Source: Carpediemonas membranifera BICM (taxonomy: Eukaryota; Protista; Fornicata). Taken from it: DNA of 64,000 bases. The stretch is taken from the NCBI GenBank assembly GCA_019828565.1, contig JAHDYR010000038.1:1064452-1128451 (forward strand), in the 5' to 3' direction. Each line of letters starts with the position of its first letter. Position 1 is the stretch's first letter. Of this stretch, positions 42,827 through 64,000 are shown piece after piece. The notes beneath the pieces were generated by a model that saw only the letters and a list, made by a program, of their open reading frames with translations, was not told the origin of the DNA and ran no database searches. The position numbers and the translations under genes were made by a program.

Positions 42827-42899
42827 TGGTCCCTGCCAGACTCGAACTGGCATCGCAGGATTCAGAGTCCTGAGTGCTAACCACTTACACTAAGGGACC
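42827..42899 (-). tRNA. tRNA-Gln(CTG)
   Basis: GGTCCCT acceptor, D arm, CAGGA-CT-CTG-AA-TCCTG anticodon arm, GCCAG-TTCGAGT-CTGGC T arm and a downstream TTTT terminator. Confidence 0.93.
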
Positions 42900-47630: not shown

Positions 47631-48144
47631 GGTCAGTCCCAATCGAATTCAGCTAAGTGTCCGCACTTTGTTCGTTGGAGATTCAAAGGCCAACAGCCTG
47701 CACTTAGGAATAAGTGCAGTGCTTCTAGCAGTCCAGAGGGACGGCTTCGGTCCTCTGTCCGGAGAGTTCAATGGTGCCCATCAATTGGCAACGTTGGTCA
47801 CAAGTGGGAGCTCTGTGACCGAGCTATCAGACTATCAGTACCTAAACAAGACTAATTTACCAAGCGAGAAGAGCAGAGCTATCAGAGAGCCAACGGGAAG
47901 ATGGTTCATATGTGGAAATCTCGAAATCACCAGGAAGGAAAGGTCGGCAAGGAGAAGCAGTAGGACCGTAGCTAAGGGCCACAGAGGCAGTGCGAATGAC
48001 GCTATCAGTTACGGAATCTGGGGACCCTAGAAGGAGAAAATCGGGAGGCAGTTTTGGAATAGCGCAATTTCGCCGCGAAGCAGAATACAGAAGAACGAAG
48101 CGGAACCGAGGAAAAAGAGGTAGGGACGAGACCTGCAGGGGGCC

Positions 48145-50664
48145 ATGCTGGCCGACTTTTGTCCCAGGGCAGTTGGAAAAATTTCCTGCGTGCGCGAAAA
48201 ACTCACTAGACGAATGTTGGTGAAAGTACCGGAAGCTACCAGGAAACGAACACAAGACCAGTGGGAAGCTATCAGACAGGAAACCAGCGCATATCTAGCT
48301 AACAGACAGGACGGAAAGACGCTGATACTCAGGTGGAACGGCGACTTCAAGGGGAAATCCTTCGGGAAGAACTCCAAGGGCCGCGAGGAAGTAGCCCGTA
48401 ACATCAGACGCATCCTACTAGCTACCGGAGCCACTGCTATCAAGGACTCTATCACTACTCATCCCAAAGGCATCCTAGCTCTGAAGGAACTCTTCATTGT
48501 GCTAACGGAAGCCTTGGATCCCAGAGAAAAGGTAGAAACCGAGATACAACAGAGCGCCGAAGCTATCAGCATCCAAGCGGGCCACAAAAACCTCAGCAAG
48601 TGGCCGTCCGAAAGCACCATCGAGAAACTAGTCCTCAGCCCCACCACCAACTGCTATCAAACACACAACGACAGCCTCTACTGGTCCAAAGAGCGTGATA
48701 CTGTTGTTATCAGAGCACCGGACACTTTCACCATCACAGCAGGCCCCCCCGGCAAAGAACGAGCCACCACTGCTACCAGAAGAGACGTCTGGGACCCCGA
48801 AAACCCTGGCACGATCACCCAAGTGGCCCTGGAACAACAGGACGGCAGCTTCAAGGTCATCCTGGATCTCAAGGACCACGAGGCCTTCGCTATCAGTAGA
48901 TTCTCGGAGGAAGCGAGAGACGTTCTCCGACTGCAAGCACCCGAAGCGCCGGCAGCGTGGATGGCAGCCTGGAACTCCACCGGCATTCCACTGGGAGGAA
49001 GAGTCATCATCTGCAAGCCGGGTGAGGAGTCCCCTCTCGGCGAGCTACCAGCCTTCGCAGCTATCAGATCACTCATCCTCGAAGCCATGTTGAACAGTAG
49101 TGAGAAGACCTATCCCCAGGAAGATAATGCTAGCAGCAACAGCACCGACGTCGACGAGGAAGAAGAGGGCGAACAGGAACCCGACGCCCCCGAGCCCAAG
49201 CAGAAGGATAAGGTGAGCTTTGACGACCTATTCGGGGACCTGAAGCCTGTAGAGCCTCGACCCCGCGACGCCAAGCAGTCCTCCTCCACCCAGAAGCCGT
49301 TACCAGACCCGCTTGCCAGAAGCCCAGACCCCAAGGCCCACCCACGGCAGCTAGCAGACAAGGAGCCAGAGCCCAAACCCACCCTCTTACTTGCGGCCAT
49401 ATACTTCGAGTGCGGCCACTCAGGCTGTGAGAGTGAAAACGTCCCAGCAAACCCAGTGGAGGGCGGAGTCATCGTCTTCAACCCGCTAACAGGGGAGATA
49501 TCAGGGCACGGGCACGGTCTCTTCTATCAGAACATGCCGGTACAGCAGATTGACCAGGCGAGGTACGCATCATGGGCCATCTCCGGCCTGCCGCCAGCTA
49601 TCTTCGTCGATGTCGCTACTGGGATGCCCCCGGAAGAGTTCAGAACGCACTTCTCAAAGTTCACAGACTGGGCCGAACACCTTGCTATCAGACTCAGGAG
49701 GATGGAGGACGCAGGCGAGTTCAAGATCGTACTATACGCTAAGGGCGTACACATGGAGAAGTTTCTGCTCACCAACCAAGTCAACGGGCTATCAGGGGAG
49801 GTAACCACCTACTTCGCGGACAGGCTAGTCGATGAGAAGGATCTCCCAGACGCTATCAGAGACTTAGAACCCAGACTAGCGGGCGCTATCAAGGCCAGCC
49901 TCCAGGACGAGAGGACCATGGGATGGCTCAACTCCTGGAGCAGTGGGTGGCAACGCAGGAGCGAGCCAAAGGCGGTGTGCCCCTACCACAGGTATGCAGC
50001 CGGCCACTACCACTGCGGGCTGGCCGATGTTACCATCTTCACAGTCAAGACCTTGGCCATGACCCACTCCTTCCGATGCCAGCAAGACAGAGAGAGCTTC
50101 CTCGGTGATATACTGCCCAAAGCTATCAGCTCCGTCGCTCAAGCAGATCTGGAAACGGACCTCTTCGGCGGTAACAGCTTCGCTAACAGACAAGAAACCT
50201 TCGAGATCTTCAGAGGCCAACCTGGCAGAGTGAGCCTGAGAGATGGCAAAGAGGGTAACAAGATCCTAGTAGTACCGGACAGATACAGCAGATTTGGCAT
50301 GGGCTTCGGCTTCTCAGATGTGGTTAAGGGTATGAAGGGTCTGCTACTTGCGCCCGCAGCTATCAAGAGAGGGAACGTCATCGACAGGAACCCGGTGTGG
50401 TCCCTCCTCGAGCACGTCGAACCTGACGAGATGGCATGGCTCCAAGCCGAGCACGGCCTCGGAGTAGCCCCCCCTCGAGCTATCATCAAGCTATCAGACG
50501 TCTACCACTGGTGGCCCGACAAAGCCACGACAGCTCATAAGGATGGATACGGCTGCCAACTGCTAGCAGAAGACTGTGCCGAGTACGCTGAAATCATCGC
50601 GAACATCAAGGCGTACAGAGGCAGAGTCGAAGGCTTCAGAGCAGCATTCATCCCGAGAGACTAG
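48145..50664 (+). CDS. LINE B upstream ORF with a Maelstrom/arenavirus-NP-like DEDDh-fold domain (~49384-50070)
   Basis: IYFE...PVEGG...LYAKGVHMEKFL...CPYH...HCGLADV. Confidence 0.65.
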   Translation: MLADFCPRAVGKISCVREKLTRRMLVKVPEATRKRTQDQWEAIRQETSAYLANRQDGKTLILRWNGDFKGKSFGKNSKGREEVARNIRRILLATGATAIKDSITTHPKGILALKELFIVLTEALDPREKVETEIQQSAEAISIQAGHKNLSKWPSESTIEKLVLSPTTNCYQTHNDSLYWSKERDTVVIRAPDTFTITAGPPGKERATTATRRDVWDPENPGTITQVALEQQDGSFKVILDLKDHEAFAISRFSEEARDVLRLQAPEAPAAWMAAWNSTGIPLGGRVIICKPGEESPLGELPAFAAIRSLILEAMLNSSEKTYPQEDNASSNSTDVDEEEEGEQEPDAPEPKQKDKVSFDDLFGDLKPVEPRPRDAKQSSSTQKPLPDPLARSPDPKAHPRQLADKEPEPKPTLLLAAIYFECGHSGCESENVPANPVEGGVIVFNPLTGEISGHGHGLFYQNMPVQQIDQARYASWAISGLPPAIFVDVATGMPPEEFRTHFSKFTDWAEHLAIRLRRMEDAGEFKIVLYAKGVHMEKFLLTNQVNGLSGEVTTYFADRLVDEKDLPDAIRDLEPRLAGAIKASLQDERTMGWLNSWSSGWQRRSEPKAVCPYHRYAAGHYHCGLADVTIFTVKTLAMTHSFRCQQDRESFLGDILPKAISSVAQADLETDLFGGNSFANRQETFEIFRGQPGRVSLRDGKEGNKILVVPDRYSRFGMGFGFSDVVKGMKGLLLAPAAIKRGNVIDRNPVWSLLEHVEPDEMAWLQAEHGLGVAPPRAIIKLSDVYHWWPDKATTAHKDGYGCQLLAEDCAEYAEIIANIKAYRGRVEGFRAAFIPRD

Positions 50665-50667
50665 GGC

Positions 50668-51444
50668 GTGGTGAGAGTCCGTGAGGCTGCCACAACGCTC
50701 CGCCGCATGGCCAGAGACAAGACGACCGACAGACTCACCCCAAACCCGATCCCAGAAGAGAAGCCAGTCAGATTCATGGGTAGATCCCCGCCCCACTACG
50801 TCCCAAAGGACCAGAACCCCGAAGAAGCCCCCTACGTCCTAAGGTACGCCGACACAGGGATGCCCGAGAAGCTCGAAGCTATCAGAAGACGGTTTGTCGG
50901 CACCACGACTGACCAAGGTCCCAGGCCGCCCCACAGACCATCTCCCAGACCCTCACAGAGAAGAGATTACAGAGGCGCAGATAACTTCAGAGGCCGTGAC
51001 AGCTGGATTGACCAGCGCACGCCACCCACGTCCCCTTTCGGCAAGAGCAGAAGCCAGCAAGACAACTATCAGTGCAGAGAGACACCCCTCTCCTCCAACT
51101 ACTCCAGCGGCACGTACAAGAGGAACTCCCTCTACAGAGGCTCACCATACGCATGGGAGAACAAGCGGCGGGCAGACGACCACTCAACGGGCACTGAGAG
51201 AAGCAGACTATCGGGGCCCCGCGAGGATGAGACTACCAAGATGCTCCAGACCCAACTAACAAGAGCCCTCAGAGAGATCGACGAACTCAAGCAACGCATC
51301 GAACAAGACCGCACCTCAGACCTCAGACGCTCAGGCAAGCCCAAGAGCAAGAAGAACAAGAGGATCAAGAAGCTGATCAAGCTACTGGACTCAGAGGACA
51401 GCGATGAGGATGTGGAGGACAAGGAGGAGGACTGTGTGGGGTAA
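50668..51444 (+). CDS. LINE B ORF1 C-terminal part (in frame after a TAG)
   Basis: R/S/P-rich, then coiled-coil, basic and acidic tail as in LINE A ORF1. Confidence 0.6.
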   Translation: MVRVREAATTLRRMARDKTTDRLTPNPIPEEKPVRFMGRSPPHYVPKDQNPEEAPYVLRYADTGMPEKLEAIRRRFVGTTTDQGPRPPHRPSPRPSQRRDYRGADNFRGRDSWIDQRTPPTSPFGKSRSQQDNYQCRETPLSSNYSSGTYKRNSLYRGSPYAWENKRRADDHSTGTERSRLSGPREDETTKMLQTQLTRALREIDELKQRIEQDRTSDLRRSGKPKSKKNKRIKKLIKLLDSEDSDEDVEDKEEDCVG

Positions 51445-51835
51445 GCAGGTAAACAGATTCTTCTTCAACAACAGAAAATTATCAGATTCTTTTACAAACA
51501 CAATCCTGGCTCCCACCCAGGACCTGGCATTAGCCAAGAAGGGCACTGCCAGTGGGCTGCAGCGACAGCCAAAGGGGGGGTCACGCCAAAGCGCCCCCTC
51601 CTAAGTCAATTGCCAGAGAACTCAATGGTCACCAGAGCACAAGAAGTTGGCCTAACGGGGATCACCTGAGCCGGCACTGAGGCCCCCGTTAGGACGCGGC
51701 TATCAGAAATTCTAGGAAATTCGCAGGATAAGAACCAAGCAGAATCAACATGGAAAGAACTAGTATAATCAGTCTCAACTCTCAAGGTCACATTGGGAAA
51801 GGGAAGGACTTTACTGCATCCATCGCCACAGCACT

Positions 51836-53944
51836 TGTGCCGGGAGAGCCGTCACAGAGTCAATGAGATGGCAACTACTTTATATACTTGACCTAGTGTA
51901 TCATATAAATCCCTGGAGCCCCGTGACATCCTACCCGCCCTCTCACGTCGGAGAGAGATCACCTGGGTTATGTGCTATGGCGGCAGACGGCTATATGGTC
52001 ATGTATTGATATCAGACTAGTCCGTAACTACGGAATGAGGCGACCTTGGTCCTGCCTCGGCGACCTAACACTAGGCCTCCTAGCTGTACTTTGGAATTCG
52101 AATGTCAACGAAAGACATGATGATGTCTCTTAGACTATGGCGACGTTCAGTCGTATTATGCTACTGCATATGCTAGCGCGTTGCTGCTGGCAGCGCTACT
52201 CCTCCCTCGTCGGGAATTGTCCAGCTCTACTAAGCTGACATAGGGCGCGGGTTCGAGTCCCGTGTAGTTCATTGTTTGATCCATCTTCAGAGTGAAGAAT
52301 TAGGACGTGGAGAGGTGCGAGGCATTGCTCACACGACGACAGGATCTGTCCTCTCTAGTTTGAGATTGATGTAATCAGATGAGTCATCTGATTGATGTCG
52401 ACGGTTTGACCCTACCCGACCCTGAAGATGCATGATCTTGTTCAAGGTAAAGAGGGATGAAGGGCCCGCCGTATAGAATTGCTGTGTAGCAATGGTCGGG
52501 TCGACCGACTTTGGCCGAGTCGACGACGACGTAGGCGCAGGGTCAAGACTAGGCGCTGGCTTGTCGTGGAGCACCAGACTGCTGATGGTGCTTGTTGTAT
52601 TGCTGAGTACTGTTCTTGGCAGTGCTTATTGCCGTTCGACAGGATGACCTGCGATGACATGAGAAGTTGATGCTCAGTGTGCACCGGTAAGATGGTGGAG
52701 CCGTCAAAACGCCACCGTTTCGTGTTAAGGATTATAAATAACCCATTTGGAGCGTTGTAGATGCTTTCCAAAACGGATATTTGATATTATTCCCTCCAAC
52801 CGTGGTTCTGCGCATAAGCTGTCCAGCGCAGAATATGGCAGATGCAAGACCCGGGGCCGGAGGACCTACTAGGCTGCCTCGCTGGGTTCCCGGTGTTTGA
52901 GCCGTGTGCGGGCCATCTTTGACCCGTATGGACCGGTTGGGCCGAATGACGCCAAACTCGGTCTCGTCGGAATCTCTCCGACTTTTGTGTGATGATAGTA
53001 GTGTATATAAACATCCTAGTTCTGCTATTACTTCTTGCTGCAGAAGCTTAGCGGCTTGGTAATGACCAAAACCTGCGAAATCTTAGTTTCGACGTTGAGA
53101 TCCAGGCCGTCCGGAGGACTTGCCGTTAACAGATGGTGATACATCGTATATAAAGTGTTCCTGAGCTGCTATTCACGGTCATTTGGCGGAATAGTTGCGG
53201 TCTTTCATTTCGACCTTTGCAGCTGATGAATCTAAGACTGACCCGAACCGAGTCGATCATACTGATCCTAAACCACGCATGCGCGGTGAGCCATATACCT
53301 CCCCTCACTAGGTGGCGAGGTCTTATTGCCCCAGAACAGGCCGTGACCATTAGTTCGGGGTCTTGACGAAGCGAGCAGGCACGTAGCCATTTGCCCGTCT
53401 TAATCTCGAGCAGACGCGAAGCCCTTAGCTCGTCTTGACTGCGAGGAGGCTGGACAGCGCCTCTTACTCTCTCTCCTCGCAGTGTTTGATGCTCGCCGCG
53501 GCGAGGAGACAGTTCAGCATCTCCCTACAGGGGAGCTGGACCATGTCCCTTACTCTCTCCCTCGGAAGATGGTTACCAGTCGACGGCGGCAGTTAGTCCG
53601 TTGGACTGTCGAGAGCTGGGTGAAAATCCTTTCCGCCCTCGTTTGTTAAATGGAAGATGCAGGCCGAAGGCCATTAGCATTGGCGATCAGAAGGTTGGGC
53701 AATGCCTCTTACACCATTATCTGTCTTGTTGCTCGCGGATTTGCGCCAAGCATAGTTGAAGATGCCCAAAACGATGAAACGTCGGGTCTTCTTGCAGAAA
53801 CAAGTTCTGTATGTGCTGATCGAGCAGCCCCTTATACTAAAGTAATTACTTTGTGCCGGGAGAGCCGTCACAGAGTCAATGAGATGGCAACTACTTTATA
53901 TACTTGACCTAGTGTATCATGTAAATCCCTGGAGCCCCGTGACA
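51836..53944 (-). mobile_element. Non-autonomous LTR element (TRIM/LARD-like)
   Basis: 93-bp TG...CA LTRs at 51836-51928 and 53852-53944 (1 mismatch), CACT TSD, minus-strand purine tract beside the left LTR, no retroelement ORF. Confidence 0.9.
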
Positions 53945-54609
53945 CACTACAAGCGAGAATCAAGAATACAGAAGCGTTATGCATCCAAGAAACATGGCGC
54001 ACGGCTAACACGAGGATCCACTGCTTTGCGGACTTCGATTATGGTCGAGAAACAGAAGAAAACCTGCTAGCAGAGAACGAGAAGAGCAGAAGAGAAGCTA
54101 ACAGACATCGACGCATCAATAAGCGGTTCGGGCTAACAGAAGAAGTCCCATTGCCAAGGTGGAAGGGCACAAGGGAAGGTATAGGCACAGTGATCAGCCC
54201 ACACGCCAAGGGAGAATGGGAAGTCGGAATCACAGACAGCCTGTCGGGCAGAATACAGGCTAGCATACTCAGAACCAGTCGGGACCTATTGATCATCAAC
54301 GTGTACGGCCCGACTACCGATAAGAAGAAAGAGGTCAAGGACAAGTTCAAGGCTGACCTGCAGGACATCTTAGACATGAAGGGCGACATGGAAGCTATCA
54401 TAATTGGAGACTGGAACATGAAACCCGATAGGGCTAGCAGAGCTATCAGATGGAAGGACTTAATGGCTAGGTTCAAGCTCCGGGCAGTGTACACAAGCGA
54501 CCACACGTACCCATCTGGGAAATCTAGACCGGACTTCGCGATGGTCTCGGAGGGCATCCGAGAAGCAAAGGTGGAGACGGTAGAGCCCCAGACAATAGGA
54601 GTGTGAGGT

Positions 54610-57600
54610 TGTGCCGTGCTAGGGCCCAGAAATATGATAAAGACTGTTTTACGAATTCCGCAGGTTAAGGGCACACTTCCCTCCCAATGCGTGTCGCACG
54701 ACTAACGGCGACCGCTCCTGCGGAACTTCTTCTTAGCACTCTCAAACATCGGCTTGAGACCAGGATTGAGCTCGAGATAACTGTCGATAGCCTCGAGCTG
54801 GTCGTAGTAGCGATTATAGGGGATGTATGAGTCCTCGTCGGGGGTGAGGCCTTCCCAACGGATCAGTAGCTCCAGAGAGCCGTTCTTCTTCTTACGGTGG
54901 CCTACGACTGCCTCCACGGGTTGTTCATCTTGCTCGTAGGCGGCAATTTCCTCGAGCTCCTTCTCCGTGAGGCCGTCGGCGTGGAATGTGACGAGTCGGT
55001 CTGCGTGGACTGTGGCGACGCACTTCGACACGAGATCCATCACCTTGTAGGTGTTGGGGTGATCGCCCTTCCCCTCCATGCGGAGCGGTCCGCGCAGAGG
55101 CGGGAGTAGCTTGGTCGGCGGCTTGCCCGGGTATCTCAGCAGGACGTAGGTTTCGTTCTCCCAGGCCCGTGTGCTGTCCGAGGAGCCTGCAGCCTTGTTT
55201 ACCTCGTAGGCTTTGACCTTGATCGCGGCAAGTTGTTGGAGCGACGTGACGTGGGCCTGGAAGCGGACGATGTCGTCGGCTTCGACTGAGCCCGGCTCGA
55301 GCATCTGGGTTGCGTTGGTCAGGGCGTCGGGCGCGACGCGCAGCATGGTTGACTTGCGTCCGAACAATAGTTCGAAGGGGCTGAGGCCTGTGGTGGAGTG
55401 GCGGGTGGCGTTGATAACGTGCTGGGCGATGGGCAGGTATGCGGGCCAGTTGTCGTCGCGGGCGTCCAGCAGGAGCGCTCTTAAGCGTCTCATGACGGTA
55501 CCATTCAGGCGTTCGACTACGCCGTTGCTGGCCGGATGATATGCCGTACTGAACCGGTGCTTGAGGCTCAGTCGCTCGTTCATCTCCTCGACTAGGGCAT
55601 TCCTGAACTGTGTACCTTGGTCAGACTGGAGCTCGGCCGGGACGCCGAAAGTCGCCCAGATCTCCAGCAATGCGGCTGCTGCCTCGGCTGCGCTCGTTGA
55701 CCGTGTGGGCTTCAATATGGTGAACTTCGAGAACACGTCCACCACCGTGATGACGTACTTGAGACCGTCTCTCTCGGGCAAAGGGCCAATGGTGTCCACC
55801 TGCACCGTCTCGAATGGGTGGATGCGCTGAGTAGAGTGCCACTTGATCGGCTCCTTGCGGGCTGGCTTTGTCTTGCGACAGATTGGACACTGGCGTAAGG
55901 TCGCGCGGACGTCATCCGACATGCCTGGCCACGTGACACCGGACTGCTTCAGATTGGCGATGGTCTGGTCTGGGCCGACGTGGCCCTGTGCACCGGCGTG
56001 CGCCCTGGTGATCTGCTCTTGGCGCGTCGTGGTGACGTGGTCGATCGAGCGGCGCACCTCGTTCTTGCGCTGAGATGATGGCCGCGACAGTGCGTCGGCT
56101 ACGAGGTTCTGCGCTCCAGCTATGTGTGTGACGTTATACGGATACTCTGTCATGGTGAGTCGCCATCGTGTCAGTTTCTTAGTGCCGTCCTCGTCTGTCT
56201 TCCTGAGTAGCCATATCAGATTACGATGGTCCGTGCGAAGCTCGAACGGCTTCAGCTTGAAGAGGGGGGAAAACTCTGGTCGCGTTACACAATAGACAAT
56301 GGCGAAAAGCTCCTGTTCCACCGTGGACCACCGTTGCTGGGTCTCGTCGAGGGTCTTGCTGTAGAAGGCGAGTGGGACCTTCTCGTCACCCTCGCCCTGC
56401 CACAGTACACCACCGATGGCGGTCGACGATGCGTCGGTCTCGAGAGTCCACTTTGCACTCAGGTCTGGGAGCGCGAGGGCGGTGTGCTCGGCTACTAGGG
56501 TCTTCATACGGGCGAATGCTTCGTCCTCAGTGGCAGTCCAATCGAGGGGGGCCGACTTCTGCGGCGATCCCTTTAGGAGGGCGTTGAGCGGGGCTGATGC
56601 GTGGGCGAGGTGTGGGATATAGTTTGACAGATAGTTGAACTTGCCTAGCGTGCGGCGCAGCTCCGTTGTCGTCGTTGGGGGTGTGAGGTCCTGGATGGCT
56701 GCGATACGTGAGGGGGAAACCGACCTGCCAGACTCGTTGACTATAAACCCACATACTTCAACCTCCTTCATGCCAATGGCACACTTGTCGGCGCGGAGTT
56801 TGATATCGTAAGCTTCCAACTGGTCGAATATCTGGGTGAGGGTCGACTTGAAATCCTGAATGGAGCGGGCGTACGCAAAGATATCGTCGATATAGGCTCT
56901 CGAACCGTCGATACCAGCGAGCATCTCGTCCATGGCTCGCTGGAACTTTGCTGGGGCGTTCTTCAGCCCGAATGGTGTACGTAAGAACTCGTAATGCCCG
57001 CCCGGGACGGTGAATGCGGTGAGCGGGATGCTATCGGTTGCCATGTTCTGCTGCCAGTATCCGCTGCGCAGGTCGAGCGCCGCGAACACGGAGCATCCGC
57101 TCGCCTCGTGTACAAACGATCGGATGTCCGGCGTGGGGTACAGGTCGTCGATGGTGGCGTTGTTCAAGACGTTGTAAGCGATGCAGAAGCGGTCTTCGCC
57201 GCTCTTCTTCTTTGCCATGACGTGCGGGCTAGAGTGCGGACTTTGACTCTCTCGGATCACGCCCTGGTTGAGCATCTTGTCGATCTCCGCGAGGGCTGAG
57301 TTTCCCGGGTCACCCTTCAACGGCCTGGGTCGGGCCCTGGGTGTAGGGCGGCTTGGATCGACGACGATCTCGTGTGGCGGCATCCTGCTGCCATCCGGAG
57401 GTAGAGGGCCAAACACGGCCTTGCGCTCGCGAAGGAAGTCGGTCAGCCAGGCAGCCAGCTCCGGGTTCTCTTCGGTCGGCAGCTTAACCTTGCGCCACTC
57501 TTCCTCGGGGTCGACTTCTTCTGTTGTCGAGTCGAGGTAGGGGTGCTGTCCCAGGCCGTCGTCGTCATCGATCGGGTCAGCGGACGGTATTAGTAGCCGG

Positions 57601-59527
57601 TCGTTCAGCAGGAAGCCGAGGCGGCGGAGCAAATCGCGTCCAATGAGGACCTTCTTCCTCTGGCCCTTCGTGACCATGAGCAACGCAGTGGTGGTCACGG
57701 TCTTTCCGTCGACACTGGGGAGGGTCAGCGAGACCTTGGCGGCTTTGCCAGTGGAGATGATATCGTCCCCAGCGCCGAGAAGTTCGACTGAGGTCGGTAT
57801 CAGGGTCACGTCGGGGATCGCTGCGAGGGCAGGGGCTGATATGACCGACGTGCAAGCGCCGATGTCGAACTTGACGTTCATGTGCTGGCCGTTGATAACA
57901 GCCGGGACCTTCACCGGGTCCTTGTCGAGTATGATGTCCTCGATCTCGTAGACTTCGTTCTCCAACTCCGAATGAGACGCTTCATCCGCGTCAAACACCT
58001 CATCGACGCGGCGGGGGTTCTTCAGGGTAGACGAAGGGCGGAGGTCCATGCGGCCGGCCCGGCGATCCGACTGTTGGTGACTGGTGGGCGCCACAGGGCG
58101 TGCGCGGTTGCCGGGCTGCTTTTGCCGCTCTTCGGGTCTGCGTTCCTGACGCTTCTCGGTCTGTGGCTGGCGTTCTTGGGCCTTGTAAGCCTCCCGTCTG
58201 ATGAGGAACCTGCAGTCCTTCGTCTCGTGGTGCGGGTTCCAGCCATGCTGTGTGCAGTATCTCGTGTGGGAAGGAGGCATGCGGAACTTGGTCTTGTCCC
58301 TGAACTGCTGGAACGGATCGCGACCATCGAGCCTGCGAGCGAGCGGCTTCCTGCCTGAAGTGCCCGACGCCTGCTCGTTGTTGTCGGCTTGTGGGCTGGC
58401 GAGTCTGAAGGCACGCCATGGGATAATGATGTTCTCGTCGTGATCAACATCCAAGTCGCGTAGTTTGTCGAGAAGTTCGCTGATCTTGTCGGAGTAGTCC
58501 TCAATCTCTTCTTCGTATACATCCTCGGCTTCTTTGGAGAAACCTCTAGGCGAAGTCCCGAATGATCCGCTCGAGCAGTTTTGCGGAGATGGTGGGGACG
58601 TCCTTGATGTCTGGGTTGAGGGCGCTTATGAGCTTACGTGCCTTCTCGACGGCCGTTCGGTGCCGGGGCTCCGGACCGTATAGCGTGATGTTGTCGAGCT
58701 TTGCCTTGAGGAGCTTGGCTCTTGCGCCCGGGTCCGTACTAGTCAAGAGGGTATATGCGAGGTAGGGGGCGATGGAGGTCGCCTCCTTGGCGAGGAAAGC
58801 GTAGACGTCCCCGCCATCGAAGACTGGCCAAGCCGCCGAGGAGGGGGCGGGCTTGGTCTCCTCGGGCACTGGGGGCATGTACACGAACGCCACCGAGACG
58901 TCTTCGCCGTCCGGGCCGGTCAGGTTGCCAGGCCGTGCGACTGTCTCGACGTTTGCGATGTCGTGGTCGTCGGTCAGCTGGGTGAAGAAGTCGCGGGCCT
59001 TCTTGCCGCAGTCAGTCAGTATCTGGGGATGTTGAGCTTCAAGGCACTCCCGGGTCATTGCTGTCAGGGTGGGGTCCTTGTGCTTAGCTGCACACTCGCT
59101 ACAGGCGGCGAACGTGGCTTTTCTTATGGTCTTCTGTACCTCCTCTACCCAGATGGCGGTGAGGTTGTCGGTCTTCGTTGTACGGGCTCGTGCCGCAGTA
59201 CTGGCAGAGCTTGTGTTTCGCCGCGCGGCGAGCATCGGAATCGGACAGAACGGTTCGTTGTAGGTCCTCGAAAGTGTCAAAAAGAGTGGTTGGGCGCCAC
59301 TGGGCGCGAAGTTTTTCTGTTGTCTCGGGGGACAATGCCCTAAAGAACGAAATTGGATTCTTCTCGTGGGGCATCGCCGAGAGGTACTCCTGGAGTGCTC
59401 TCTCGACGGCGAACGGGGTGTCAATTGTAAGAGTCTTCATTTGAATCGGCAGTATCGATACTGTGCCGTGCTAGGGCCCAGAAATATGATAAAGACTGTT
59501 TTACGAATTCCGCAGGTTAAGGGCACA
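54610..59527 (-). mobile_element. Full-length chromodomain-bearing Ty3/Gypsy element
   Basis: Identical 66-bp LTRs at 54610-54675 and 59462-59527; PPT GGGAGGGAAG; TSD AGGT/GGGT. Confidence 0.93.
54702..59440 (-). CDS. Gypsy gag-pol: gag (frameshifted, 58546-59440), then protease, RT, RNase H, integrase and chromodomain (54702-58454)
   Basis: FDIGA, TPFGL, YIDD, TDAS, ADALSR, HHCC, SDQG, VERLN, LLIRWEG. Confidence 0.95.
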
Positions 59528-59983
59528 GGGTTCCTCCCACAAGGCTATCAGACTATCGTGGGACGAGCCGAGGTACCCGGAAACTGAGCCCAGGACGGAC
59601 CCCCAGCTGGAAGTCCCGGAGGTCACCACCTGGAAGATGAAGAAGAGAGGAAACCCTACTACCATCAAGACACTTAGGGAGGGACAGTCCATTGACCAAT
59701 GGGAAGAAGCTATCAGAATATCCGTGGGGAAGCCAACCCGGACCAGGGAACCGAAGGAGACGAGCGAAGTCTTCCCCAGCGAAGTATGGAACAAGCTGCA
59801 GCGCACAACGTGGTCTGAGGCAGGCAACACGACAAGGTTGGCTATCATGAAAGACAGGCTATCGGAGTGCTGGAACAAGCGTAGAGAGAAATGGGTGGAT
59901 GAGCTAGGCATGAGCTCCAAGGAAGGATACAAAACGTCGAGGCGGCGGTCAGACGCTGGTGGTGTGAAAATCAATACAAGGGC

Positions 59984-62200
59984 ATGCCGAGAAGCCTGCT
60001 AAAGGATGGCAAGATCACCACCGACAAAGAAGCTATCAGTGAAATCCTCCTCGAGCAATACGCAAAGGTAAGTAAGGGAGATGAGCCGGAATGGAAACTG
60101 TGGCGGAGCAGAGCTGGGAAGGAGTTTAAGACAGAAGAGATCAGAGAGGCTATCAGACGCATCAAAGCAGACACAGCAACAGGGCCGGACAACACATCAG
60201 GAGATATGGTTAGGAGCCTGGACAGCTACGGGTACGAACAGCTAACAAAGTTCTTTAACCGAATCTACGAGGAGGGAAGAATACCGGAAGTGTGGAAGTA
60301 TGCAACGGTATCTGCTATCCACAAGACTGGGAAACCCAGAGTCAAGGCGGAATCGTATAGGCCTATCTCGCTAACACCAATCCTGTACAGAGTCTACGGC
60401 AGACTACTGAAGAAAAGGCTAGAGGATGCCGCATGGAAATTCATACCCAGAGAGCAGGCGGGGTTCCAAGCTAACAAAGATGTGATCCAACAAATCCAAT
60501 ACATAGTACAGCGCCATCAAGAAGGAGGGGAAACCACGTCAGTATTCTTGGACATCGAGAAGGCCTATGATACAGTCCCAAGGGACATCTTGATGGACAA
60601 GCTATACGGGATGGGTGTGAAGGAGCACCTGGTCAGAGCTATCCAGAGCACGCTAACAGAAACGTGGATCTCCGTCAGGGGGGCAAGATCATGGAAGAAG
60701 ACGAACAGAGGAGTGAAGCAAGGGTGTGTACTCGCCCCCACTCTCTTTATCATATTCATGGCTAACTGTCCCCACCTGGCAAGGAAGATTCATGAGCAGC
60801 AGGACTACGATATCAGAGAGCCACCGCTACCAGTAACAGGAAGGGACCCGCTACCAGCAGCCCTAACCATGTTTGTCGATGACACCGCTATCACAGGAAC
60901 CACCCCAGAGCAGTGCCAGACGGTCTCGAGAATCATGATGAGCATCATCGAGGAGCACAAGATGAGAGCGAATGCGATGAAGAATGTAATGATCAGCGTA
61001 TCGTGGGCAGCAAGGGTGAACTTAGGAGGAGTCGGCCTCACCCCGGCGAAGGAAGCTCGGTATCTAGGACTGTGGCTATCCAGTGGACCAGACCCGCTAG
61101 CAGCATGCATCCAAAAGAAGAGGGAACAGAGCATCAGGTACCAAAGGCTGTGCAGGTGGGCTGGATGGACGAGAAGGGACATGCCGGCAATGGCTAGCAG
61201 ACTACTCCTTGAAATTTATATATGGCCGAGAATCATGTTTGGGGTTGAAGTGTGGGGAAGCCAACCAGGAGGTACGAGAATCTGGAATGAGTGGCAAGGA
61301 ATCATGGCCGGTACAGGAACAGGAGGCGGATCGGCGGTGAGAATACTGAACGGATGGGTCGACCTGCGAGCCCATCTCGAACTGCTAGCAGTGAAGAGGG
61401 TGGCAGCTTTCAGAGACCTGGATATACCAGTCAAGGACAGGAGTTGGAATGAGGGGACAATCATGGGAGAGAGCAGAGAGAGGGCTAACAGAGTGCTCCA
61501 CAAGGTAAGGGGCGACGCTACCACAAAGGCCAGGGTAAGCTATGGGAAGGAAAGGATTAGAATGAGCTGGATCAAGAGATGCAAGAGCAAAACAGCCCAG
61601 GGGCTGATGGCGGTCGCGGGGACCCGGAGAATGGCCAGGTGCATGATGGGCAAACCAATCGTCAGAAGGAAACCAATCAAAGGCCAGTCAAGAGCGGATT
61701 GGAAACGAGTGCTATCAGTAGCGGCAAATGTAAGCCCCTCCCCCTCCTCAGCAGGAAAAGGAGAAGGCCCCCAGAGAGTGCTAGCAAACCTGACCATAGA
61801 TGAGGACCTGAAGAGGGAAATTAGCAGAAGGTGCCCACTCTGCTCGGCAACAACGGAGGTCGACCTGTTATGGGAAATCCTGGAAAGGAAACCGGATGAC
61901 GAGGAAGAACAGGAGATGATCAGGAAATGGGTCCAAGAACAAGCCCTGGGGTCGGCCGCCCACATCATAGGCGAATGTCCAAAGGTAGACAGAGGGCCCA
62001 AGTGGAGTAGATGGTGGGAAGCAGCGAAGTCCAAAACAGAATACCTAGCTATCAGATCAGGACCGGATGGAGACTGGTACAACGAAAGGCCGATATTAGA
62101 ACTGCAACAGCTTATCCTCTGGGAGAAGGAAGAGATATGGGAGGGGCTGAAGAAGGGACTCCAGGCCCTAGGAGAGGTGTATAACAGCTACAAGGAGTAA
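59984..62200 (+). CDS. LINE B ORF2, RT and C-terminal CCHC portion
   Basis: YRPISL, DIEKAYD, GVKQG, FVDD, CPLC...HIIGECP. Confidence 0.95.
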   Translation: MPRSLLKDGKITTDKEAISEILLEQYAKVSKGDEPEWKLWRSRAGKEFKTEEIREAIRRIKADTATGPDNTSGDMVRSLDSYGYEQLTKFFNRIYEEGRIPEVWKYATVSAIHKTGKPRVKAESYRPISLTPILYRVYGRLLKKRLEDAAWKFIPREQAGFQANKDVIQQIQYIVQRHQEGGETTSVFLDIEKAYDTVPRDILMDKLYGMGVKEHLVRAIQSTLTETWISVRGARSWKKTNRGVKQGCVLAPTLFIIFMANCPHLARKIHEQQDYDIREPPLPVTGRDPLPAALTMFVDDTAITGTTPEQCQTVSRIMMSIIEEHKMRANAMKNVMISVSWAARVNLGGVGLTPAKEARYLGLWLSSGPDPLAACIQKKREQSIRYQRLCRWAGWTRRDMPAMASRLLLEIYIWPRIMFGVEVWGSQPGGTRIWNEWQGIMAGTGTGGGSAVRILNGWVDLRAHLELLAVKRVAAFRDLDIPVKDRSWNEGTIMGESRERANRVLHKVRGDATTKARVSYGKERIRMSWIKRCKSKTAQGLMAVAGTRRMARCMMGKPIVRRKPIKGQSRADWKRVLSVAANVSPSPSSAGKGEGPQRVLANLTIDEDLKREISRRCPLCSATTEVDLLWEILERKPDDEEEQEMIRKWVQEQALGSAAHIIGECPKVDRGPKWSRWWEAAKSKTEYLAIRSGPDGDWYNERPILELQQLILWEKEEIWEGLKKGLQALGEVYNSYKE

Positions 62201-62525
62201 AGAGACTATCAGACACATGAGCTAGCAGAACAAGGGTACGCTAACAACAATATCAGGAACAAGTATAAAGCACCAAAGCAAACAGAAAATCAGATGTCAG
62301 ACAAATCCACACAGTGGTTGCACCAGTCAAAGGGCACCAAAGGAAGCGGATAGCACTAGTCATGGGTCCGGAGGGCAAAGATAGCCCTGCCGCCCTTGTT
62401 AACGAGAAAGATAACCAGAAATATGTAGCACAAGAGAACTGTTGAAAGGGGGGAAGGACAAACGGGCCTAGCGCCCGGGTGGTTACGCCACCCCCGCCGG
62501 AACCCACGCCGCAGCTGACAGGTAG

Positions 62526-64000
62526 TGTGATCTTGTCGAGGTTAAAGGTTTCAAAACAAACTGTTTATAGGGTTCGCACGTGTAGTTGGTACCCTAAACT
62601 GCTCACACTTCCCCTCTAAAGGTGCAGCTCCGGGTGAGCCTCGGCATAAATGTCGAGGGCTTCGAGGTCGCGGACCTCGTGGTACGGGAGCCACTCATCG
62701 GCGCCTGGGTAGCCATCCCAGGCGACGAGGAATTCGAGGGTAGACTTCGTGGGGCCACCGCGGTGGCGGGTGATGGCCTCGACTTCGTAGGTGTCGTCGT
62801 CAAGAGAGGCGACGGTGATGTCATCGAAGGCCAGGGAGTCGTCGTACTCCACGAGCCGGGAACCGTGATACTGGAAGGTGGCGCCGGCAGTGGGGTTGTG
62901 TACGGTGTAGATGTCGTGCTCGCGGTCAGTGATCGTGTATGGGCCAACGAGCTTAGTAGACAGCTTGGTGGGGCGCTTCGAAGGGCGCGTGACTAGCACC
63001 TTCGAGCCAATAGGAAGGGGCTCGTCGCCGAAAGCCGGACGTTTCGAGAGGACGTTCTCTTGGTGCTGGCGTGCTGTCTCAATGAGCTTGGAGGCTGGGC
63101 CTGGAGAACACGGCTAAAGAAGCGGCCGTATTCACTCTTCTCCCTCCTCAACGTGGGCGTCGGACGACAGGAAGGGGGTGACGTTCTGTGAAGCGAACAT
63201 GAGCTGTGCGGGGGCAATGCCCGTGGTGGCACATATCGTGGTGTTCATGATCCGCTGGACGACTGGGAGGTAAAAGGGACCAGTTGTTAACGTCGCGCAG
63301 CTCCTGGAGTGATGGTACGTAGGTGTCGTGAGAGCTCGGCGTTAGCTCTTTCGACGAGCCCGTTGGCTCTGGGGTGGTATGGAAGAGAGACAACGTGTTG
63401 GGCGCCGAAGAGCTTAATGAGCTGTTGGAAAGCGGTGGCAAGGTACTGAGAACCGCGATCACTTCGGAAAAGAAGACGGAGTACCGTAGCGTCCCGTGAC
63501 GGAGATAAAGAGCGCGAAGGGCCTCTGCAGAAGAAGCATCCTTGCATGGGGACCAGCTCTACGAAGCGTGTGAAGGTGTCAATGAAGGTGATAACGTAGC
63601 GGCATCCGTTGGAGTCTGCAGGATAAGAAGCCCGACCGTATCAAACGCCCAGCAGGAGCGTGGGGTGACGCCCATGGTAGGGCGGAGGCCTGTCTGGAAG
63701 GCGCTTGGGAAGTCTGGCGTTCTTCTGACATATCGGGCAAGCCTTAATATACTCGGCGACAGCGTTGCTCATTCCACGGAAGTCAAGGTTTCGTTCCTTA
63801 AGGAGGGCGGAGTGTAGCCTCTCGGCCGAGGTGTCCCTCGACGGCATTGTGGACAGAGGCTATGATAAGTCGCTGGAGTGTAGGGGCATTCTCGGGGGGT
63901 TGGACGATGAAGCACCTGGATATGCCATCAGTGAGGGTGTTGGAGACGCCAGAGATGTGTTCAACGACAAAGTCGAACTCTTGGAGTCTGAGGTTCCAGC
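62526..64000 (-). mobile_element. 3' part of another chromodomain Gypsy (LTR 62526-62607, chromodomain, integrase fragments)
   Basis: TGTGA...TCACA followed by a PPT; GPY motif, EFLVAWDGY, NGLVERAN, CPIC. Confidence 0.88.

What the first reader, a model, noticed from the sequence alone, without database searches (positions are those of the whole stretch)
47823..62230. Strand-specific GCTATCAG motif written throughout LINE B
Seen: at least 20 exact plus-strand copies in ~7.9 kb of LINE B sequence (47823, 47878, 48001, 48268, 48562, 48889, 49060, 49684, 49788, 49852, 50122, 50490, 50878, 51699, 54442, 59544, 59709, 60032, 60149, 61711, 62048), plus GCTA[ACG]CAG variants. A random 8-mer is expected about 0.1 times. 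The motif occurs in UTRs and in different reading frames (AIR/AIS vs LS). I did not see it in the nested LTR elements or at equivalent LINE A positions. Inference: a self-recognition code for an element-encoded protein, for RNA packaging or sequence-specific anti-silencing.
Basis: partly seen in the sequence, partly recalled or inferred. Interest (0 to 1): 0.8.

Follow-up and report, generated by a model that had tools for sequence, protein, structure and literature searches.

The report
Family-specific sense-strand words in LINEs
A LINE retrotransposon of the free-living protist Carpediemonas membranifera carries the 8-base word GCTATCAG 21 times (42 times as GCTANCAG) on its RNA-sense strand only. 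This is far beyond chance and runs against its own codon usage, and sister LINE families carry different words, which points to a family-specific tag on the element's RNA whose reader is still unknown.

Summary
All 21 exact GCTATCAG copies lie on the + strand, and all lie inside one LINE ("LINE B", about 47642-62550) that two nested LTR elements split into three pieces. Base composition predicts 0.09 copies. Dinucleotide shuffles never exceed 6-7. Synonymous-codon shuffles give 1.3 against 9 observed in ORF1, and 0.4 against 4 in the RT ORF. The word is degenerate (GCTANCAG, 42 sense against 3 antisense) and occurs in UTRs and in two reading frames. It has no exact copy in 150 kb of other C. 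membranifera DNA and no copy of either form in 10 kb of host-gene sense strand.

The new result is that this is a family trait. Sister LINEs with about 75% identical RT but only 38-48% identical ORF1 each carry their own sense-strand word: CAGGGA in LINE A and CAGAGA in a third family. These words are built by synonymous choices at conserved residues. LTR, DIRS and flanking controls show nothing of the kind.

The best explanation, which is inferred and not shown, is a multivalent, family-specific RNA tag read by a protein, most likely the element's own fast-evolving ORF1p. ORF1p contains a DEDDh exonuclease-like domain and a coiled coil. I found no published parallel.

The parts
47642..51835 (+). 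LINE B, piece 1: leader, 5'UTR, ORF1, ORF1 extension, inter-ORF block and start of ORF2
   Evidence: The 5' end is set by the shared start ATCGAATTCAGCTAAGT with LINE C. The piece ends at the TSD CACT of nested element 1.
47642..47822 (+). Conserved, probably structured 5' leader with no copy of the word. The first word starts immediately after it.
   Evidence: alignment with the LINE C leader gave 48 predicted pairs, 10 of them with compensatory changes; 0 words. No Rfam match.
47823..48144 (+). 5'UTR carrying 3 exact words (47823, 47878, 48001) and one 1-mismatch copy (47831)
48145..50664 (+). ORF1 (839 aa) ending in TAG. It holds 9 exact words and 26 sites with at most 1 mismatch, and a DEDDh exonuclease-like domain at residues about 410-680.
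50668..51444 (+). ORF1 extension (258 aa; short coiled coil, then a basic and acidic tail). In LINE A it is continuous with ORF1. The TAG at 50662 corresponds to TGG in LINE C.
   Evidence: Not joined to ORF1 for any search.
51487..51835 (+). Block conserved between families (about 71-72% DNA identity with LINE C and LINE A): inter-ORF spacer and ORF2 start. Holds one word (51699).
51836..53948 (+). Nested element 1: 100-bp LTRs (TG...CA) and TSD CACT. Not part of LINE B and contains no word.
53949..54609 (+). LINE B, piece 2: AP-endonuclease part of ORF2. Holds 1 exact word (54442) and 5 one-mismatch words, and an in-frame TGA at about 54604-54606.
54610..59527 (-). Nested element 2: chromovirus (PR-RT-RNaseH-IN-chromodomain) with 66-bp LTRs. 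Not part of LINE B and contains no word.
59528..62550 (+). LINE B, piece 3: rest of ORF2 (frame change near 59980; RT ORF 59984-62200) and the 3'UTR, cut off by another LTR element at about 62510-62560. Holds 6 exact words and 18 sites with at most 1 mismatch in ORF2, and 2 in the 3'UTR.
47823..47830 (+). GCTATCAG copy 1 (5'UTR; followed by ACTATCAG)
47878..47885 (+). GCTATCAG copy 2 (5'UTR)
48001..48008 (+). GCTATCAG copy 3 (5'UTR)
48268..48275 (+). GCTATCAG copy 4 (ORF1, frame 0, AIR)
48562..48569 (+). GCTATCAG copy 5 (ORF1, AIS)
48889..48896 (+). GCTATCAG copy 6 (ORF1, AIS)
49060..49067 (+). GCTATCAG copy 7 (ORF1, AIR)
49684..49691 (+). GCTATCAG copy 8 (ORF1, AIR)
49788..49795 (+). GCTATCAG copy 9 (ORF1, other frame, LS)
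49852..49859 (+). GCTATCAG copy 10 (ORF1, AIR)
50122..50129 (+). GCTATCAG copy 11 (ORF1, AIS)
50490..50497 (+). GCTATCAG copy 12 (ORF1, other frame, LS)
50878..50885 (+). GCTATCAG copy 13 (ORF1 extension, AIR)
51699..51706 (+). GCTATCAG copy 14 (inter-ORF / ORF2 start)
54442..54449 (+). GCTATCAG copy 15 (endonuclease part of ORF2, AIR)
59544..59551 (+). GCTATCAG copy 16 (ORF2)
59709..59716 (+). GCTATCAG copy 17 (ORF2)
60032..60039 (+). GCTATCAG copy 18 (RT ORF, AIS; sister families have EIG and TIS here)
60149..60156 (+). GCTATCAG copy 19 (RT ORF, AIR; LINE A has GCG ATC AGA and LINE C has GCC ATC AGT at the same residues)
61711..61718 (+). GCTATCAG copy 20 (RT ORF, other frame, LS)
62048..62055 (+). 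GCTATCAG copy 21 (RT ORF, AIR)
10895..15564 (+). LINE A (5'-truncated copy), main part. Its own sense-strand word is CAGGGA.
36485..37281 (+). LINE A 3' end, separated from the main part by about 21 kb of nested insertions. It holds 9 CAGGGA and ends in a (TTTC)n tail.

Best explanation
GCTANCAG (T preferred at N, often followed by A) is a cis-acting word on the sense RNA of LINE B. It occurs about once per 180 nt from just after the structured 5' leader to the 3'UTR. It is one instance of a family-specific word system in a clade of Carpediemonas membranifera LINEs: LINE A uses CAGGGA and LINE C uses CAGAGA. I propose that the many copies act together as low-affinity binding sites for a protein that must tell this family's transcript from host mRNAs and from sister LINE transcripts. 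The most likely binder is the element's own ORF1p, which evolves much faster than ORF2p and has a DEDDh exonuclease-like domain, a coiled coil and a basic tail. In this model, coating, RNP assembly or protection is directed to the element's own RNA. Shown: the statistics, strand and family specificity, construction of words by synonymous substitutions, absence from host genes, and the fold of the ORF1 domain. Inferred: that the words act on RNA, that a protein reads them, that the protein is ORF1p, and that the outcome is RNP assembly.
For: The words are selected at the nucleotide level:
- Synonymous-codon shuffles give far fewer words in B and in A and C.
- In the codon alignment of the conserved RT, words arise by synonymous choices at conserved residues and without indels. 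At AIR, B has GCT ATC AGA, A has GCG ATC AGA and C has GCC ATC AGT. At PLPA, B has CCG CTA CCA GCA and A has ACG CTG CCG GCC. In the C|AGR|GA context, A uses AGG 21:8 and C uses AGA 22:1.

They are on the sense strand only:
- Exact copies are 21 sense against 0 antisense, and sites with at most 1 mismatch are 59 against 5.
- CAGAGA is 67 against 0.
- Words occur in UTRs and in several frames.

They are family specific:
- Density is 5.5-9.9 per kb in the word's own family, at most 2.3 in sister families and at most 0.6 elsewhere.
- Twelve LTR, DIRS and flank controls show no word above shuffles.

They are not a general host signal:
- 10 kb of host-gene sense strand has 0 GCTANCAG and 0.2 per kb of the other two words.
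- GCTATCAG has 0 copies in 150 kb of other DNA.

The pattern fits co-divergence with ORF1:
- RT is 75-78% identical among A, B and C, while ORF1 is 38-48% identical.
- The two families whose words differ by one base (A and C) have the more similar ORF1: 44-48%, against 38-40% to B.

Other points:
- Words start right after the conserved leader and are dense there, with 5 CAGAGA in the first 80 nt in LINE C.
- ORF1 carries a nucleic-acid-binding fold (DEDDh). Its long relatives have a C-terminal coiled coil, and the extension has a basic tail.
Against: - There is no binding data of any kind.
- The only confidently modelled ORF1 domain is an exonuclease-like fold, not a known sequence-specific RNA-binding module. 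The N-terminal 400 residues could not be modelled (pLDDT 35).
- Only three families are available, so the ORF1/word co-divergence is anecdotal.
- The A and C words are short, purine-rich and partly tied to an Arg-codon preference in a purine-rich, T-poor strand.
- LINE B is known from one dead copy (nonsense codon, frame change, D-to-Y in ExoI, two nested insertions), so conservation of word positions within the family could not be tested.
- The words show no common flanking sequence and are not consistently displayed in predicted loops. Accessibility is raised clearly only for CAGAGA, slightly for GCTANCAR, and not for CAGGGA.
- Spacing is Poisson-like, with no sign of a lattice.
Confidence: 0.4

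Rival explanations
1. The words are binding sites for host RNA-binding proteins, for example SR-like or export-adaptor proteins. These would give a long intronless LINE transcript export competence, stability or protection from cryptic splicing, as described for consensus elements in naturally intronless mRNAs.
For: The sense-strand restriction and multi-copy dispersed layout fit. The A and C words are purine-rich, like classical splicing-enhancer and SR-protein sites (my own knowledge, not tested). Sequence-dependent recruitment of export factors to intronless RNAs is established in animals (PMC3575797, PMC8216466). The host has very short, U-rich introns, while the LINE sense strands are T-poor (14-15%).
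Against: Three sister families in one genome use three different words, where one host factor should drive convergence. Host gene sense strands (11 genes, 10 kb, some of them intronless) have none of the B word and only background levels of the others. GCTANCAG is not purine-rich.
Confidence: 0.2
2. The words act on DNA or on single-stranded cDNA rather than on RNA. Possible roles are transcription-factor sites (the reverse complement CTGATAGC contains a GATA-type core), recognition sites of a DNA adenine methyltransferase such as those carried by neighbouring DIRS elements, or polar signals used during target-primed reverse transcription or second-strand synthesis.
For: The reverse complement of the commonest form contains TGATAG (seen directly in the sequence). 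DIRS elements in the same window carry a weak Dam-like match, and a Carpediemonadida clade of TE-linked DAM genes is reported (bioRxiv 10.64898/2026.05.21.726589). Strand-polar DNA words exist in bacteria (Chi, KOPS; my own knowledge).
Against: Proteins that bind double-stranded DNA do not explain a 59:5 orientation bias. Position 5, the T that makes the GATA core, varies in half of the sites. The words run through 7 kb of coding sequence rather than clustering at a promoter, and LINE B itself encodes no methyltransferase. A role on the minus-strand cDNA cannot be excluded.
Confidence: 0.1
3. The B word mimics the fused branch-point/3' splice-site end of the host's ultra-short introns and recruits, or acts as a decoy for, spliceosomal factors.
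For: Host introns recovered here are 28-32 nt and end in ...(T/C)AC(AC)AG, CTTATTCAG or CTCTTACAG. The variants GCTAACAG and GCTATCAG resemble these ends, and all three family words contain CAG.
Against: None of the 6-7 host introns ends in GCTANCAG. The preferred base at the would-be branch position is T. No 5' splice site sits 25-35 nt upstream of the words: GTAAG occurs only 5 times in LINE B and GTAAGT once. The surrounding sequence is T-poor, unlike introns. CAGGGA and CAGAGA carry no branch-point-like part.
Confidence: 0.08
4. There is no function. The words are a by-product of extreme strand composition, context-dependent codon bias or a mutational process in the LINE lineage.
For: LINE sense strands are strongly skewed (T 14-15%; AGAG 178 against CTCT 3). 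Part of the A and C signal follows a family-wide AGG/AGA preference. Weaker, borderline words occur in other LINEs (AGGACA in L002; CCGCA in L013).
Against: Dinucleotide, synonymous-codon and codon-order shuffles all fail to reproduce the counts. The B word is an information-rich 8-mer containing two T's in a T-poor strand. Words appear by many independent point substitutions at aligned codons, including triple synonymous choices, and equally in UTRs. No known mutational process writes one 8-mer at 40 scattered sites.
Confidence: 0.07

Closest known systems
Dispersed packaging signals of single-stranded RNA viruses (MS2, STNV, picornaviruses, HBV pgRNA); PMC6281560, PMC4751978
   Same: Many copies of a short degenerate motif are scattered through coding and non-coding parts of the packaged strand and superimposed on the genetic code. 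They are individually weak and act collectively, and they are specific to the virus's own coat protein.
   Different: In those viruses the motif is displayed in stem-loops and is read by a capsid protein that builds an icosahedral shell.
LINE-1 ORF1p cis-preference and RNP assembly (PMC6428221)
   Same: A LINE-encoded, coiled-coil, fast-evolving ORF1 protein coats its own transcript to form the retrotransposition RNP.
   Different: L1 ORF1p binds RNA with little sequence specificity, and cis-preference is attributed to co-translational binding. No family-specific word is known. The ORF1 here has a DEDDh exonuclease-like domain instead of the RRM/CTD.
Stringent-type LINE 3'UTR recognition by the RT (for example eel UnaL2, R2); own knowledge, not checked here
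   Same: The element's own RNA is recognised in a sequence-specific way by an element-encoded protein. This separates co-resident families and allows parasitism by SINEs that copy the signal.
   Different: That system uses a single structured signal at the 3' end, not 40-70 words spread over the whole transcript. The LINE A 3' end here is a (TTTC)n tail, not the word.
Consensus elements (CAR-E) and SR-protein sites in naturally intronless mRNAs (PMC3575797, PMC8216466)
   Same: Short words repeated inside the coding sequence of intronless transcripts act at the RNA level.
   Different: Those are host-wide signals read by host factors. Here the words are absent from host genes and differ between sister TE families.
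Strand-polar over-represented words of bacterial genomes (Chi, KOPS, DNA uptake sequences); own knowledge
   Same: Octamer-scale words are heavily over-represented and strongly biased to one strand. Uptake sequences serve as a 'self' label.
   Different: Those act on DNA, genome-wide, in bacteria, and are read by RecBCD, FtsK or the competence machinery.
DEDDy exonuclease ORFs of bdelloid rotifer LTR and Penelope-like retroelements (PMC5408684)
   Same: A retroelement carries a DnaQ-superfamily 3'-5' exonuclease-like ORF. A Cys-His-Cys motif is noted there, as in Maelstrom.
   Different: Those are the DEDDy type, in ORF3 of LTR elements and PLEs. Here it is a DEDDh-like domain inside ORF1 of a LINE. 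No word system is reported there.

Membership tests
Non-LTR (LINE) retrotransposon with AP-endonuclease and RT | Reverse transcriptase domain of the non-LTR type | tested here: met
   RVT_1 E=3.8e-34 in 59984-62200; nearest relatives are APE+RT LINE proteins.
Non-LTR (LINE) retrotransposon with AP-endonuclease and RT | AP-type endonuclease N-terminal to the RT | tested here: met
   53949-54609 translates to an EEP-like sequence. It aligns with the ORF2 N-terminus of LINE A and LINE C. LINE A ORF2 has a weak Exo_endo_phos match.
Non-LTR (LINE) retrotransposon with AP-endonuclease and RT | No LTRs; 5' truncated copies; 3' tail; target-site duplication | tested here: inconclusive
   No terminal repeats were found. 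LINE A in the window is 5' truncated and ends in (TTTC)n. The LINE B 3' end is cut off by another element, so its tail and TSD could not be read.
Dispersed RNA packaging signals | Many dispersed copies of a degenerate motif on the packaged strand, beyond codon constraints | tested here: met
Dispersed RNA packaging signals | Motif presented in a stem-loop | tested here: not met
   There is no conserved flank. Local unpaired probability is only slightly raised for B (p=0.005 for GCTANCAR), strongly raised for CAGAGA and not raised for CAGGGA.
Dispersed RNA packaging signals | Specific binding by the element's structural protein | not testable with these tools
   Needs EMSA or CLIP.
Maelstrom (MAEL) domain, for ORF1 | RNase H-like / DnaQ-H exonuclease fold | tested here: met
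   AF2 core pLDDT is mostly 80-96. Foldseek top hits are DnaQ, TREX1, ERI1/3'hExo and Orn, with TM (target) 0.5-0.6.
Maelstrom (MAEL) domain, for ORF1 | Sequence membership (Pfam MAEL), and loss of DEDDh catalytic residues in favour of ECHC | tested here: not met
   No Pfam match at E<=10. Relatives keep DxE and Hx4D, so the family looks like a DEDDh enzyme with an added CPYH...HC motif. Only this dead copy has Y for the first D.
GATA-factor binding-site cluster | WGATAR core at every site, in either orientation | tested here: not met
   The T that makes the GATA core is present in only 21 of 42 GCTANCAG sites, and orientation is 59:5.
Host exonic enhancer / intronless-mRNA export element | Present in host mRNAs | tested here: not met
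   0 GCTANCAG in 10 kb of host-gene sense strand. The sample is small.
Metamonad fused branch-point/3' splice-site motif | Lies 25-35 nt downstream of a GTAAGT/GTATGT 5' site in U-rich sequence, with consensus ...YAC(AC)AG | tested here: not met

The most novel reading that the evidence does not exclude
Sister LINE families in one small genome carry co-evolving 'barcodes'. Each family writes its own short word dozens of times into its transcript, and its rapidly diverging ORF1p reads only that word. ORF1p is a DEDDh exonuclease-like, coiled-coil protein. Each family would then package or spare its own RNA and ignore or degrade that of competitors. This would be a kin-recognition system that drives the splitting of LINE lineages and replaces the co-translational cis-preference of mammalian L1.
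Probability: 0.25. Interest if true: 0.85.

Novelty: new variant of a known kind. Interest (0 to 1): 0.68.

Why it matters
How a LINE protein picks its own RNA among all cellular RNAs, and among rival LINE families, is a long-standing question. For L1 the answer is 'cis-preference', with no known sequence code. Here three closely related families in a 24-Mb protist genome each carry an obvious, countable candidate code. That makes the question directly testable with three proteins and three oligonucleotides. It also shows that selection on an RNA word can override codon usage and amino-acid choice across a whole retrotransposon, which matters for TE annotation and for reading 'codon bias' in TEs. 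Finally, it adds a DEDDh-like ORF1 type to the LINE repertoire, in an organism already notable for lacking ORC and Ndc80.

Tried and rejected
- Peptide or codon explanation (AIR/AIS tripeptides). Rejected: the word also lies in UTRs and in a second frame, and synonymous shuffles lose it.
- Tandem or low-complexity repeat. Rejected: spacing is irregular and Poisson-like and the flanks are unique.
- Motif common in the genome. Not seen in 150 kb plus 10 kb of host genes. The whole assembly could not be scanned.
- Same word in related LINEs of a second assembly (GCA_002919055.1, organism not named by the tools; L003-L007, L012, L013). Absent; there is only a weak C-rich word (CCGCA) in L013.
- Literature search for the octamer. 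Only primer hits. No paper on Carpediemonas LINEs was found.
- Rfam search. No ribozyme or other family in the 5' half of LINE B; the whole window has only a tRNA.
- Pfam on ORF1 and its relatives. Nothing, including Maelstrom. The PDB sequence profile gave only coiled-coil noise.
- AF2 model of ORF1 residues 1-400. Unusable, pLDDT 35, so no fold search was run on it.
- Complementary partner for the word inside the element or nearby (small-RNA or antisense idea). The reverse complement has 0 copies in all sequence held.
- Word equals the 3' tail used for priming. Rejected for LINE A, whose tail is (TTTC)n.
- Comparison of the two LINE C copies (98.5% identical). They are too similar, and post-insertion decay is neutral, so this says nothing about selection.
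- L014 and L015 ORF1-like fragments. Too short to show a word.

Procedural points: No contig was taken for human. ORF1 and its extension were never joined across the stop.

Full report
**Source.** The ORF1 protein of the element is encoded once in the public collection, on contig JAHDYR010000038.1 of assembly GCA_019828565.1. That WGS prefix belongs to the Carpediemonas membranifera genome (Salas-Leiva et al. 2021, PMC8516963), which has 57.1% GC. C. membranifera is a free-living metamonad. Nothing in the window was taken for human sequence, and no pathogen is involved.

**The observation.** All copies are on the + strand and none on the - strand. Dinucleotide shuffles of the window gave a mean of 2.0 and a maximum of 7.

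Repeat analysis and reading of the junctions show that 'LINE B' is one element split by two nested LTR elements:
- A 2.1-kb element with 100-bp LTRs (51836-53944, TSD CACT).
- A chromovirus on the - strand with unusually short 66-bp LTRs (54610-59527; Pfam RT, RNase H, integrase and chromodomain).

The stretch between them (53949-54609) is the endonuclease part of LINE B ORF2 and holds the copy at 54442. All 21 copies are therefore inside about 7.6-7.9 kb of LINE B, where base composition predicts 0.09. No 8-mer reached more than 6 copies in 100 dinucleotide shuffles of the element.

**Codon controls.**
- With the protein and codon usage held fixed and synonymous codons shuffled, ORF1 gives 1.33 copies (max 5 in 2000 shuffles) against 9 observed. 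The RT ORF gives 0.43 (max 3) against 4 observed.
- Shuffling codon order gives about 0.1.
- Ala-Ile is over-represented in ORF1: 14 observed, 4.4 expected, and only 1 Ile-Ala. Within Ala-Ile, Ala is GCT in 12 of 14 cases against 24 of 81 overall.

The nucleotide word therefore shapes both codon choice and amino-acid sequence.

**Anatomy of the word.**
- It is degenerate at position 5 (T 21, G 9, A 7, C 5, giving 42 GCTANCAG).
- Sites with at most one mismatch number 59 on the sense strand and 5 on the antisense strand.
- A is common on both sides.
- It lies in frame 0 (18 sites) and frame 2 (12 sites) of the ORFs.
- It lies in non-coding sequence at the same density as in ORF1: 12 per kb in the 5'UTR against 10 per kb in ORF1.
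- Spacing cannot be told apart from random placement.

**Frequency elsewhere.** Neither form of the word has a copy in the sense strand of 11 host genes, 10 kb in total.

**Structure of LINE B.**
- Its 5' end is at about 47642. From there it shares the start ATCGAATTCAGCTAAGT and a roughly 180-nt leader with a second family (LINE C, loci L008 and L010). The leader alignment supports a common fold, with 10 of 48 pairs compensatory, although only two distinct sequences are available. There is no Rfam match.
- In both families the first word begins right after the leader.
- ORF1 (839 aa) ends in TAG at 50662. The next 258 codons continue the homology with relatives: LINE C has TGG at that codon, and the LINE A protein P0128 runs through it. 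ORF1 was therefore originally about 1100 aa, like its 1129-1250-aa relatives in another assembly, which have a C-terminal coiled coil.
- This copy is dead. It has the TAG, an in-frame TGA in the endonuclease, a frame change near 59980, Tyr in place of the first catalytic Asp of the ORF1 domain, and two insertions. Its 3'UTR is cut off at about 62510-62560 by another LTR element.

**The ORF1 protein.** No Pfam family matches ORF1 or its relatives.
- An AlphaFold model of residues 370-839 has a confident core at ORF1 residues about 410-680. Its best PDB matches are DEDDh/DnaQ-type 3'-5' exonucleases: a DnaQ domain, TREX1, ERI1/3'hExo and oligoribonuclease.
- The relatives keep DxE and Hx4D, plus a conserved CPYH...HC motif.
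- 'MAEL-like' therefore holds only at the level of the superfamily fold. The family looks more like a possibly active DEDDh enzyme.
- DEDDy-type exonuclease ORFs are known in rotifer LTR and Penelope-like elements (PMC5408684). I found no report of such a domain in a LINE ORF1.
- The N-terminal 400 residues could not be modelled.

**The phenomenon is a family trait.** ORF1 has paralogues in the same genome, and I fetched their loci.
- LINE C (two copies, 98.5% identical) has CAGAGA 67 times on the sense strand and none on the antisense strand in 6.6-6.8 kb. The shuffle maximum is 23-25.
- LINE A has CAGGGA 24-39 times against a shuffle maximum of 15-18. In the window it is a 5'-truncated copy split into 10895-15564 and 36485-37281 by about 21 kb of nested insertions. 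Another copy is in L011.
- Both words survive synonymous-codon shuffles and occur in all three frames and in UTRs.
- Density is 5.5-9.9 per kb for each word in its own family, at most 2.3 in sister families, and at most 0.6 in LTR, DIRS and other sequence.
- Twelve control regions show no word above their shuffles: chromoviruses, DIRS elements, flanks and an LTR element.
- The picture is weaker in other LINEs. A fourth C. membranifera LINE (L002) is borderline, and two LINEs of a second assembly (L003, L005) show nothing. Of two further LINEs from that assembly, L012 shows nothing and L013 has a weak C-rich word.

**How the words were made.** The RT regions of A, B and C are 75-78% identical in protein and align codon by codon without indels at the word sites. 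Words are produced by substitutions, often synonymous, at conserved residues:
- At AIR: B has GCT ATC AGA, A has GCG ATC AGA, and C has GCC ATC AGT.
- At PLPA: B has CCG CTA CCA GCA, A has ACG CTG CCG GCC, and C has CCA CTC CCG GCA.
- At RE/RD: A has C AGG GAx and C has C AGA GAx.

In the context C|AGR|GA, family A uses AGG 21:8 and family C uses AGA 22:1, much more skewed than their overall Arg usage. About a quarter of A and C sites are positionally shared, with only the G/A switch. None of seven B sites in this region is a word in A or C. This is the signature of directional, family-specific selection on the nucleotide sequence. It is not the signature of inserted sequence or of a shared composition.

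**ORF1 diverges faster than ORF2.** ORF1 is 38-48% identical among the families, against about 75% for the RT. The two families whose words differ by one base (A and C) have the more similar ORF1: 44-48%, against 38-40% to B. This fits co-divergence of word and ORF1p, but with three families it is only suggestive.

**Mechanism.** Several features argue for a signal read on the single-stranded sense transcript (or, less likely, on its cDNA) by a factor that distinguishes families:
- The words are on the sense strand only.
- They extend through UTRs.
- They differ between families and are missing from host genes.
- They are densest just after the leader.

The element's own ORF1p is the obvious candidate, which gives a multivalent self-recognition tag for RNP assembly. 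I put this at about 0.4.

Against it:
- There is no binding evidence.
- No recognised sequence-specific RNA-binding module was found.
- The words are not displayed in consistent predicted loops. Accessibility is clearly raised only for CAGAGA.

The rivals are listed below with my weights. The remaining weight is left unassigned:
- Host RNA-binding proteins (0.2). Weakened by the family differences and by the absence from host genes.
- DNA- or cDNA-level reading, including a GATA-like core or adenine methylation (0.1). Weakened by the orientation bias and by the variable position 5.
- Mimicry of the host's intron 3' end (0.08). Host introns recovered here are 28-32 nt and end in ...YAC(AC)AG. 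No intron ends in the word, and no 5' site precedes the words.
- A non-functional by-product of composition (0.07). Contradicted by every shuffle control.

**Comparison with known systems.** The nearest functional analogue is the set of dispersed packaging signals of ssRNA viruses (PMC6281560, PMC4751978). The stem-loop presentation and the capsid that define that system are not met here. L1 ORF1p cis-preference (PMC6428221) is the nearest LINE analogue but has no sequence code. Elements of intronless mRNAs (PMC3575797, PMC8216466) are host-wide rather than family-specific. I found no description of such words in LINEs or in Carpediemonas. I rate this a new variant of a known kind (a dispersed cis-acting RNA recognition motif) in a new setting.

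**Limits.**
- LINE B is represented by one copy.
- The whole assembly could not be scanned.
- The identity of the second assembly (GCA_002919055.1) was not given by the tools.
- All functional statements are inference.

Noticed in passing
window 10895-15564 and 36485-37281; loci L011 1-5750, L009 9800-11410: LINE A has its own sense-strand word, CAGGGA (6.7 per kb, almost none antisense). The cluster at 36538-37178 is the 3' end of the same LINE A copy, separated from the rest by about 21 kb of nested insertions.
   Followed up: yes
L008 9417-16236 and L010 9419-16400: A third sister family (LINE C, two copies 98.5% identical) has CAGAGA 67 times on the sense strand and never on the antisense strand. 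This includes a run of 24-nt coding repeats that each hold the word.
   Followed up: yes
window 47642-47822; L010 9420-9600: A conserved leader of about 180 nt lies at the 5' end of LINE B and LINE C. Both share the start ATCGAATTCAGCTAAGT and a predicted fold with compensatory pairs. There is no Rfam match, so it is not a recognised HDV-like ribozyme.
   Followed up: partly
window 51487-51835; L010/L008 about 13842-14198; L011 3930-4280: The inter-ORF block is conserved at 71-72% DNA identity between families, although it is mostly non-coding (GC-rich, with runs such as CAAAGGGGGGGTCACGCC). It may be a structured RNA for ORF2 translation.
   Followed up: no
window 48145-50664 (ORF1 residues about 410-680): LINE ORF1 contains a DEDDh/DnaQ-type exonuclease-like domain. 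Relatives conserve DxE, Hx4D and a CPYH...HC motif, while this copy has Tyr for the first Asp. I found no report of this ORF1 type in LINEs.
   Followed up: partly
window 50662-50664; L010 about 12500-12550: ORF1 is interrupted at the same place in two families: an in-frame TAG in LINE B, and a frame change about 12 codons earlier in both LINE C copies. It is continuous in LINE A (P0128). These may be defects, or recoding that sets the ratio of short to extended ORF1p.
   Followed up: partly
window 54610-59527 (-) and 51836-53948: A chromodomain-bearing Ty3/gypsy element has LTRs of only 66 bp (TGTGCC...GGCACA). A 2.1-kb element with 100-bp LTRs has no obvious ORF. Both are nested in LINE B.
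   Followed up: partly
window 37318-42636 and 43541-47640: DIRS-like elements carry tyrosine recombinase ORFs and an RT ORF with a weak Dam-like methyltransferase match (39875-41776, E=0.0015). A 2026 preprint reports a Carpediemonadida clade of DAM genes (10.64898/2026.05.21.726589). LINE B inserted into the RNase H region of the downstream element.
   Followed up: no
window 29152-31544; L009 2960-5250: A 40-bp satellite (GCGCTCTCCTGCCGCTCTCCCTCCCGTGCGCCATACCCCG) occurs in several blocks and is also present at another locus.
   Followed up: no
window 11044-11320: A 36/72/144-bp tandem repeat lies inside the ORF1-extension region of LINE A. Each unit carries CGCAGGGAC and GACAGAGAG.
   Followed up: no
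window 37262-37283; L011 5733-5748: LINE A ends in a short (TTTC)n/(TTCT)n tail rather than poly(A).
   Followed up: partly
L015 10255-13350 (-), L010 20196-21545 (-): Host genes have ultra-short introns (28-32 nt) with GTAAGT/GTATGT 5' sites and ends such as TCACACACAG, TTTTCACACAG, TTTTTACACAG and CTTATTCAG. This resembles the fused branch-point/3' site of other metamonads.
   Followed up: partly
window 42827-42899 (-): A tRNA gene (Rfam 64 bits) lies between two DIRS-like elements.
   Followed up: no
window 23786-24574 (-): A SET-domain ORF (Pfam E=2e-11) is the only clear non-TE protein domain seen in the window.
   Followed up: no
L013 2400-7355 (assembly GCA_002919055.1): A LINE with a distant ORF1 homologue in a second assembly has a weaker sense-strand word: CCGCA 49 sense against 1 antisense (shuffle maximum 38), and CCCGCA 23 against 0. 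The habit may therefore be older than C. membranifera.
   Followed up: partly
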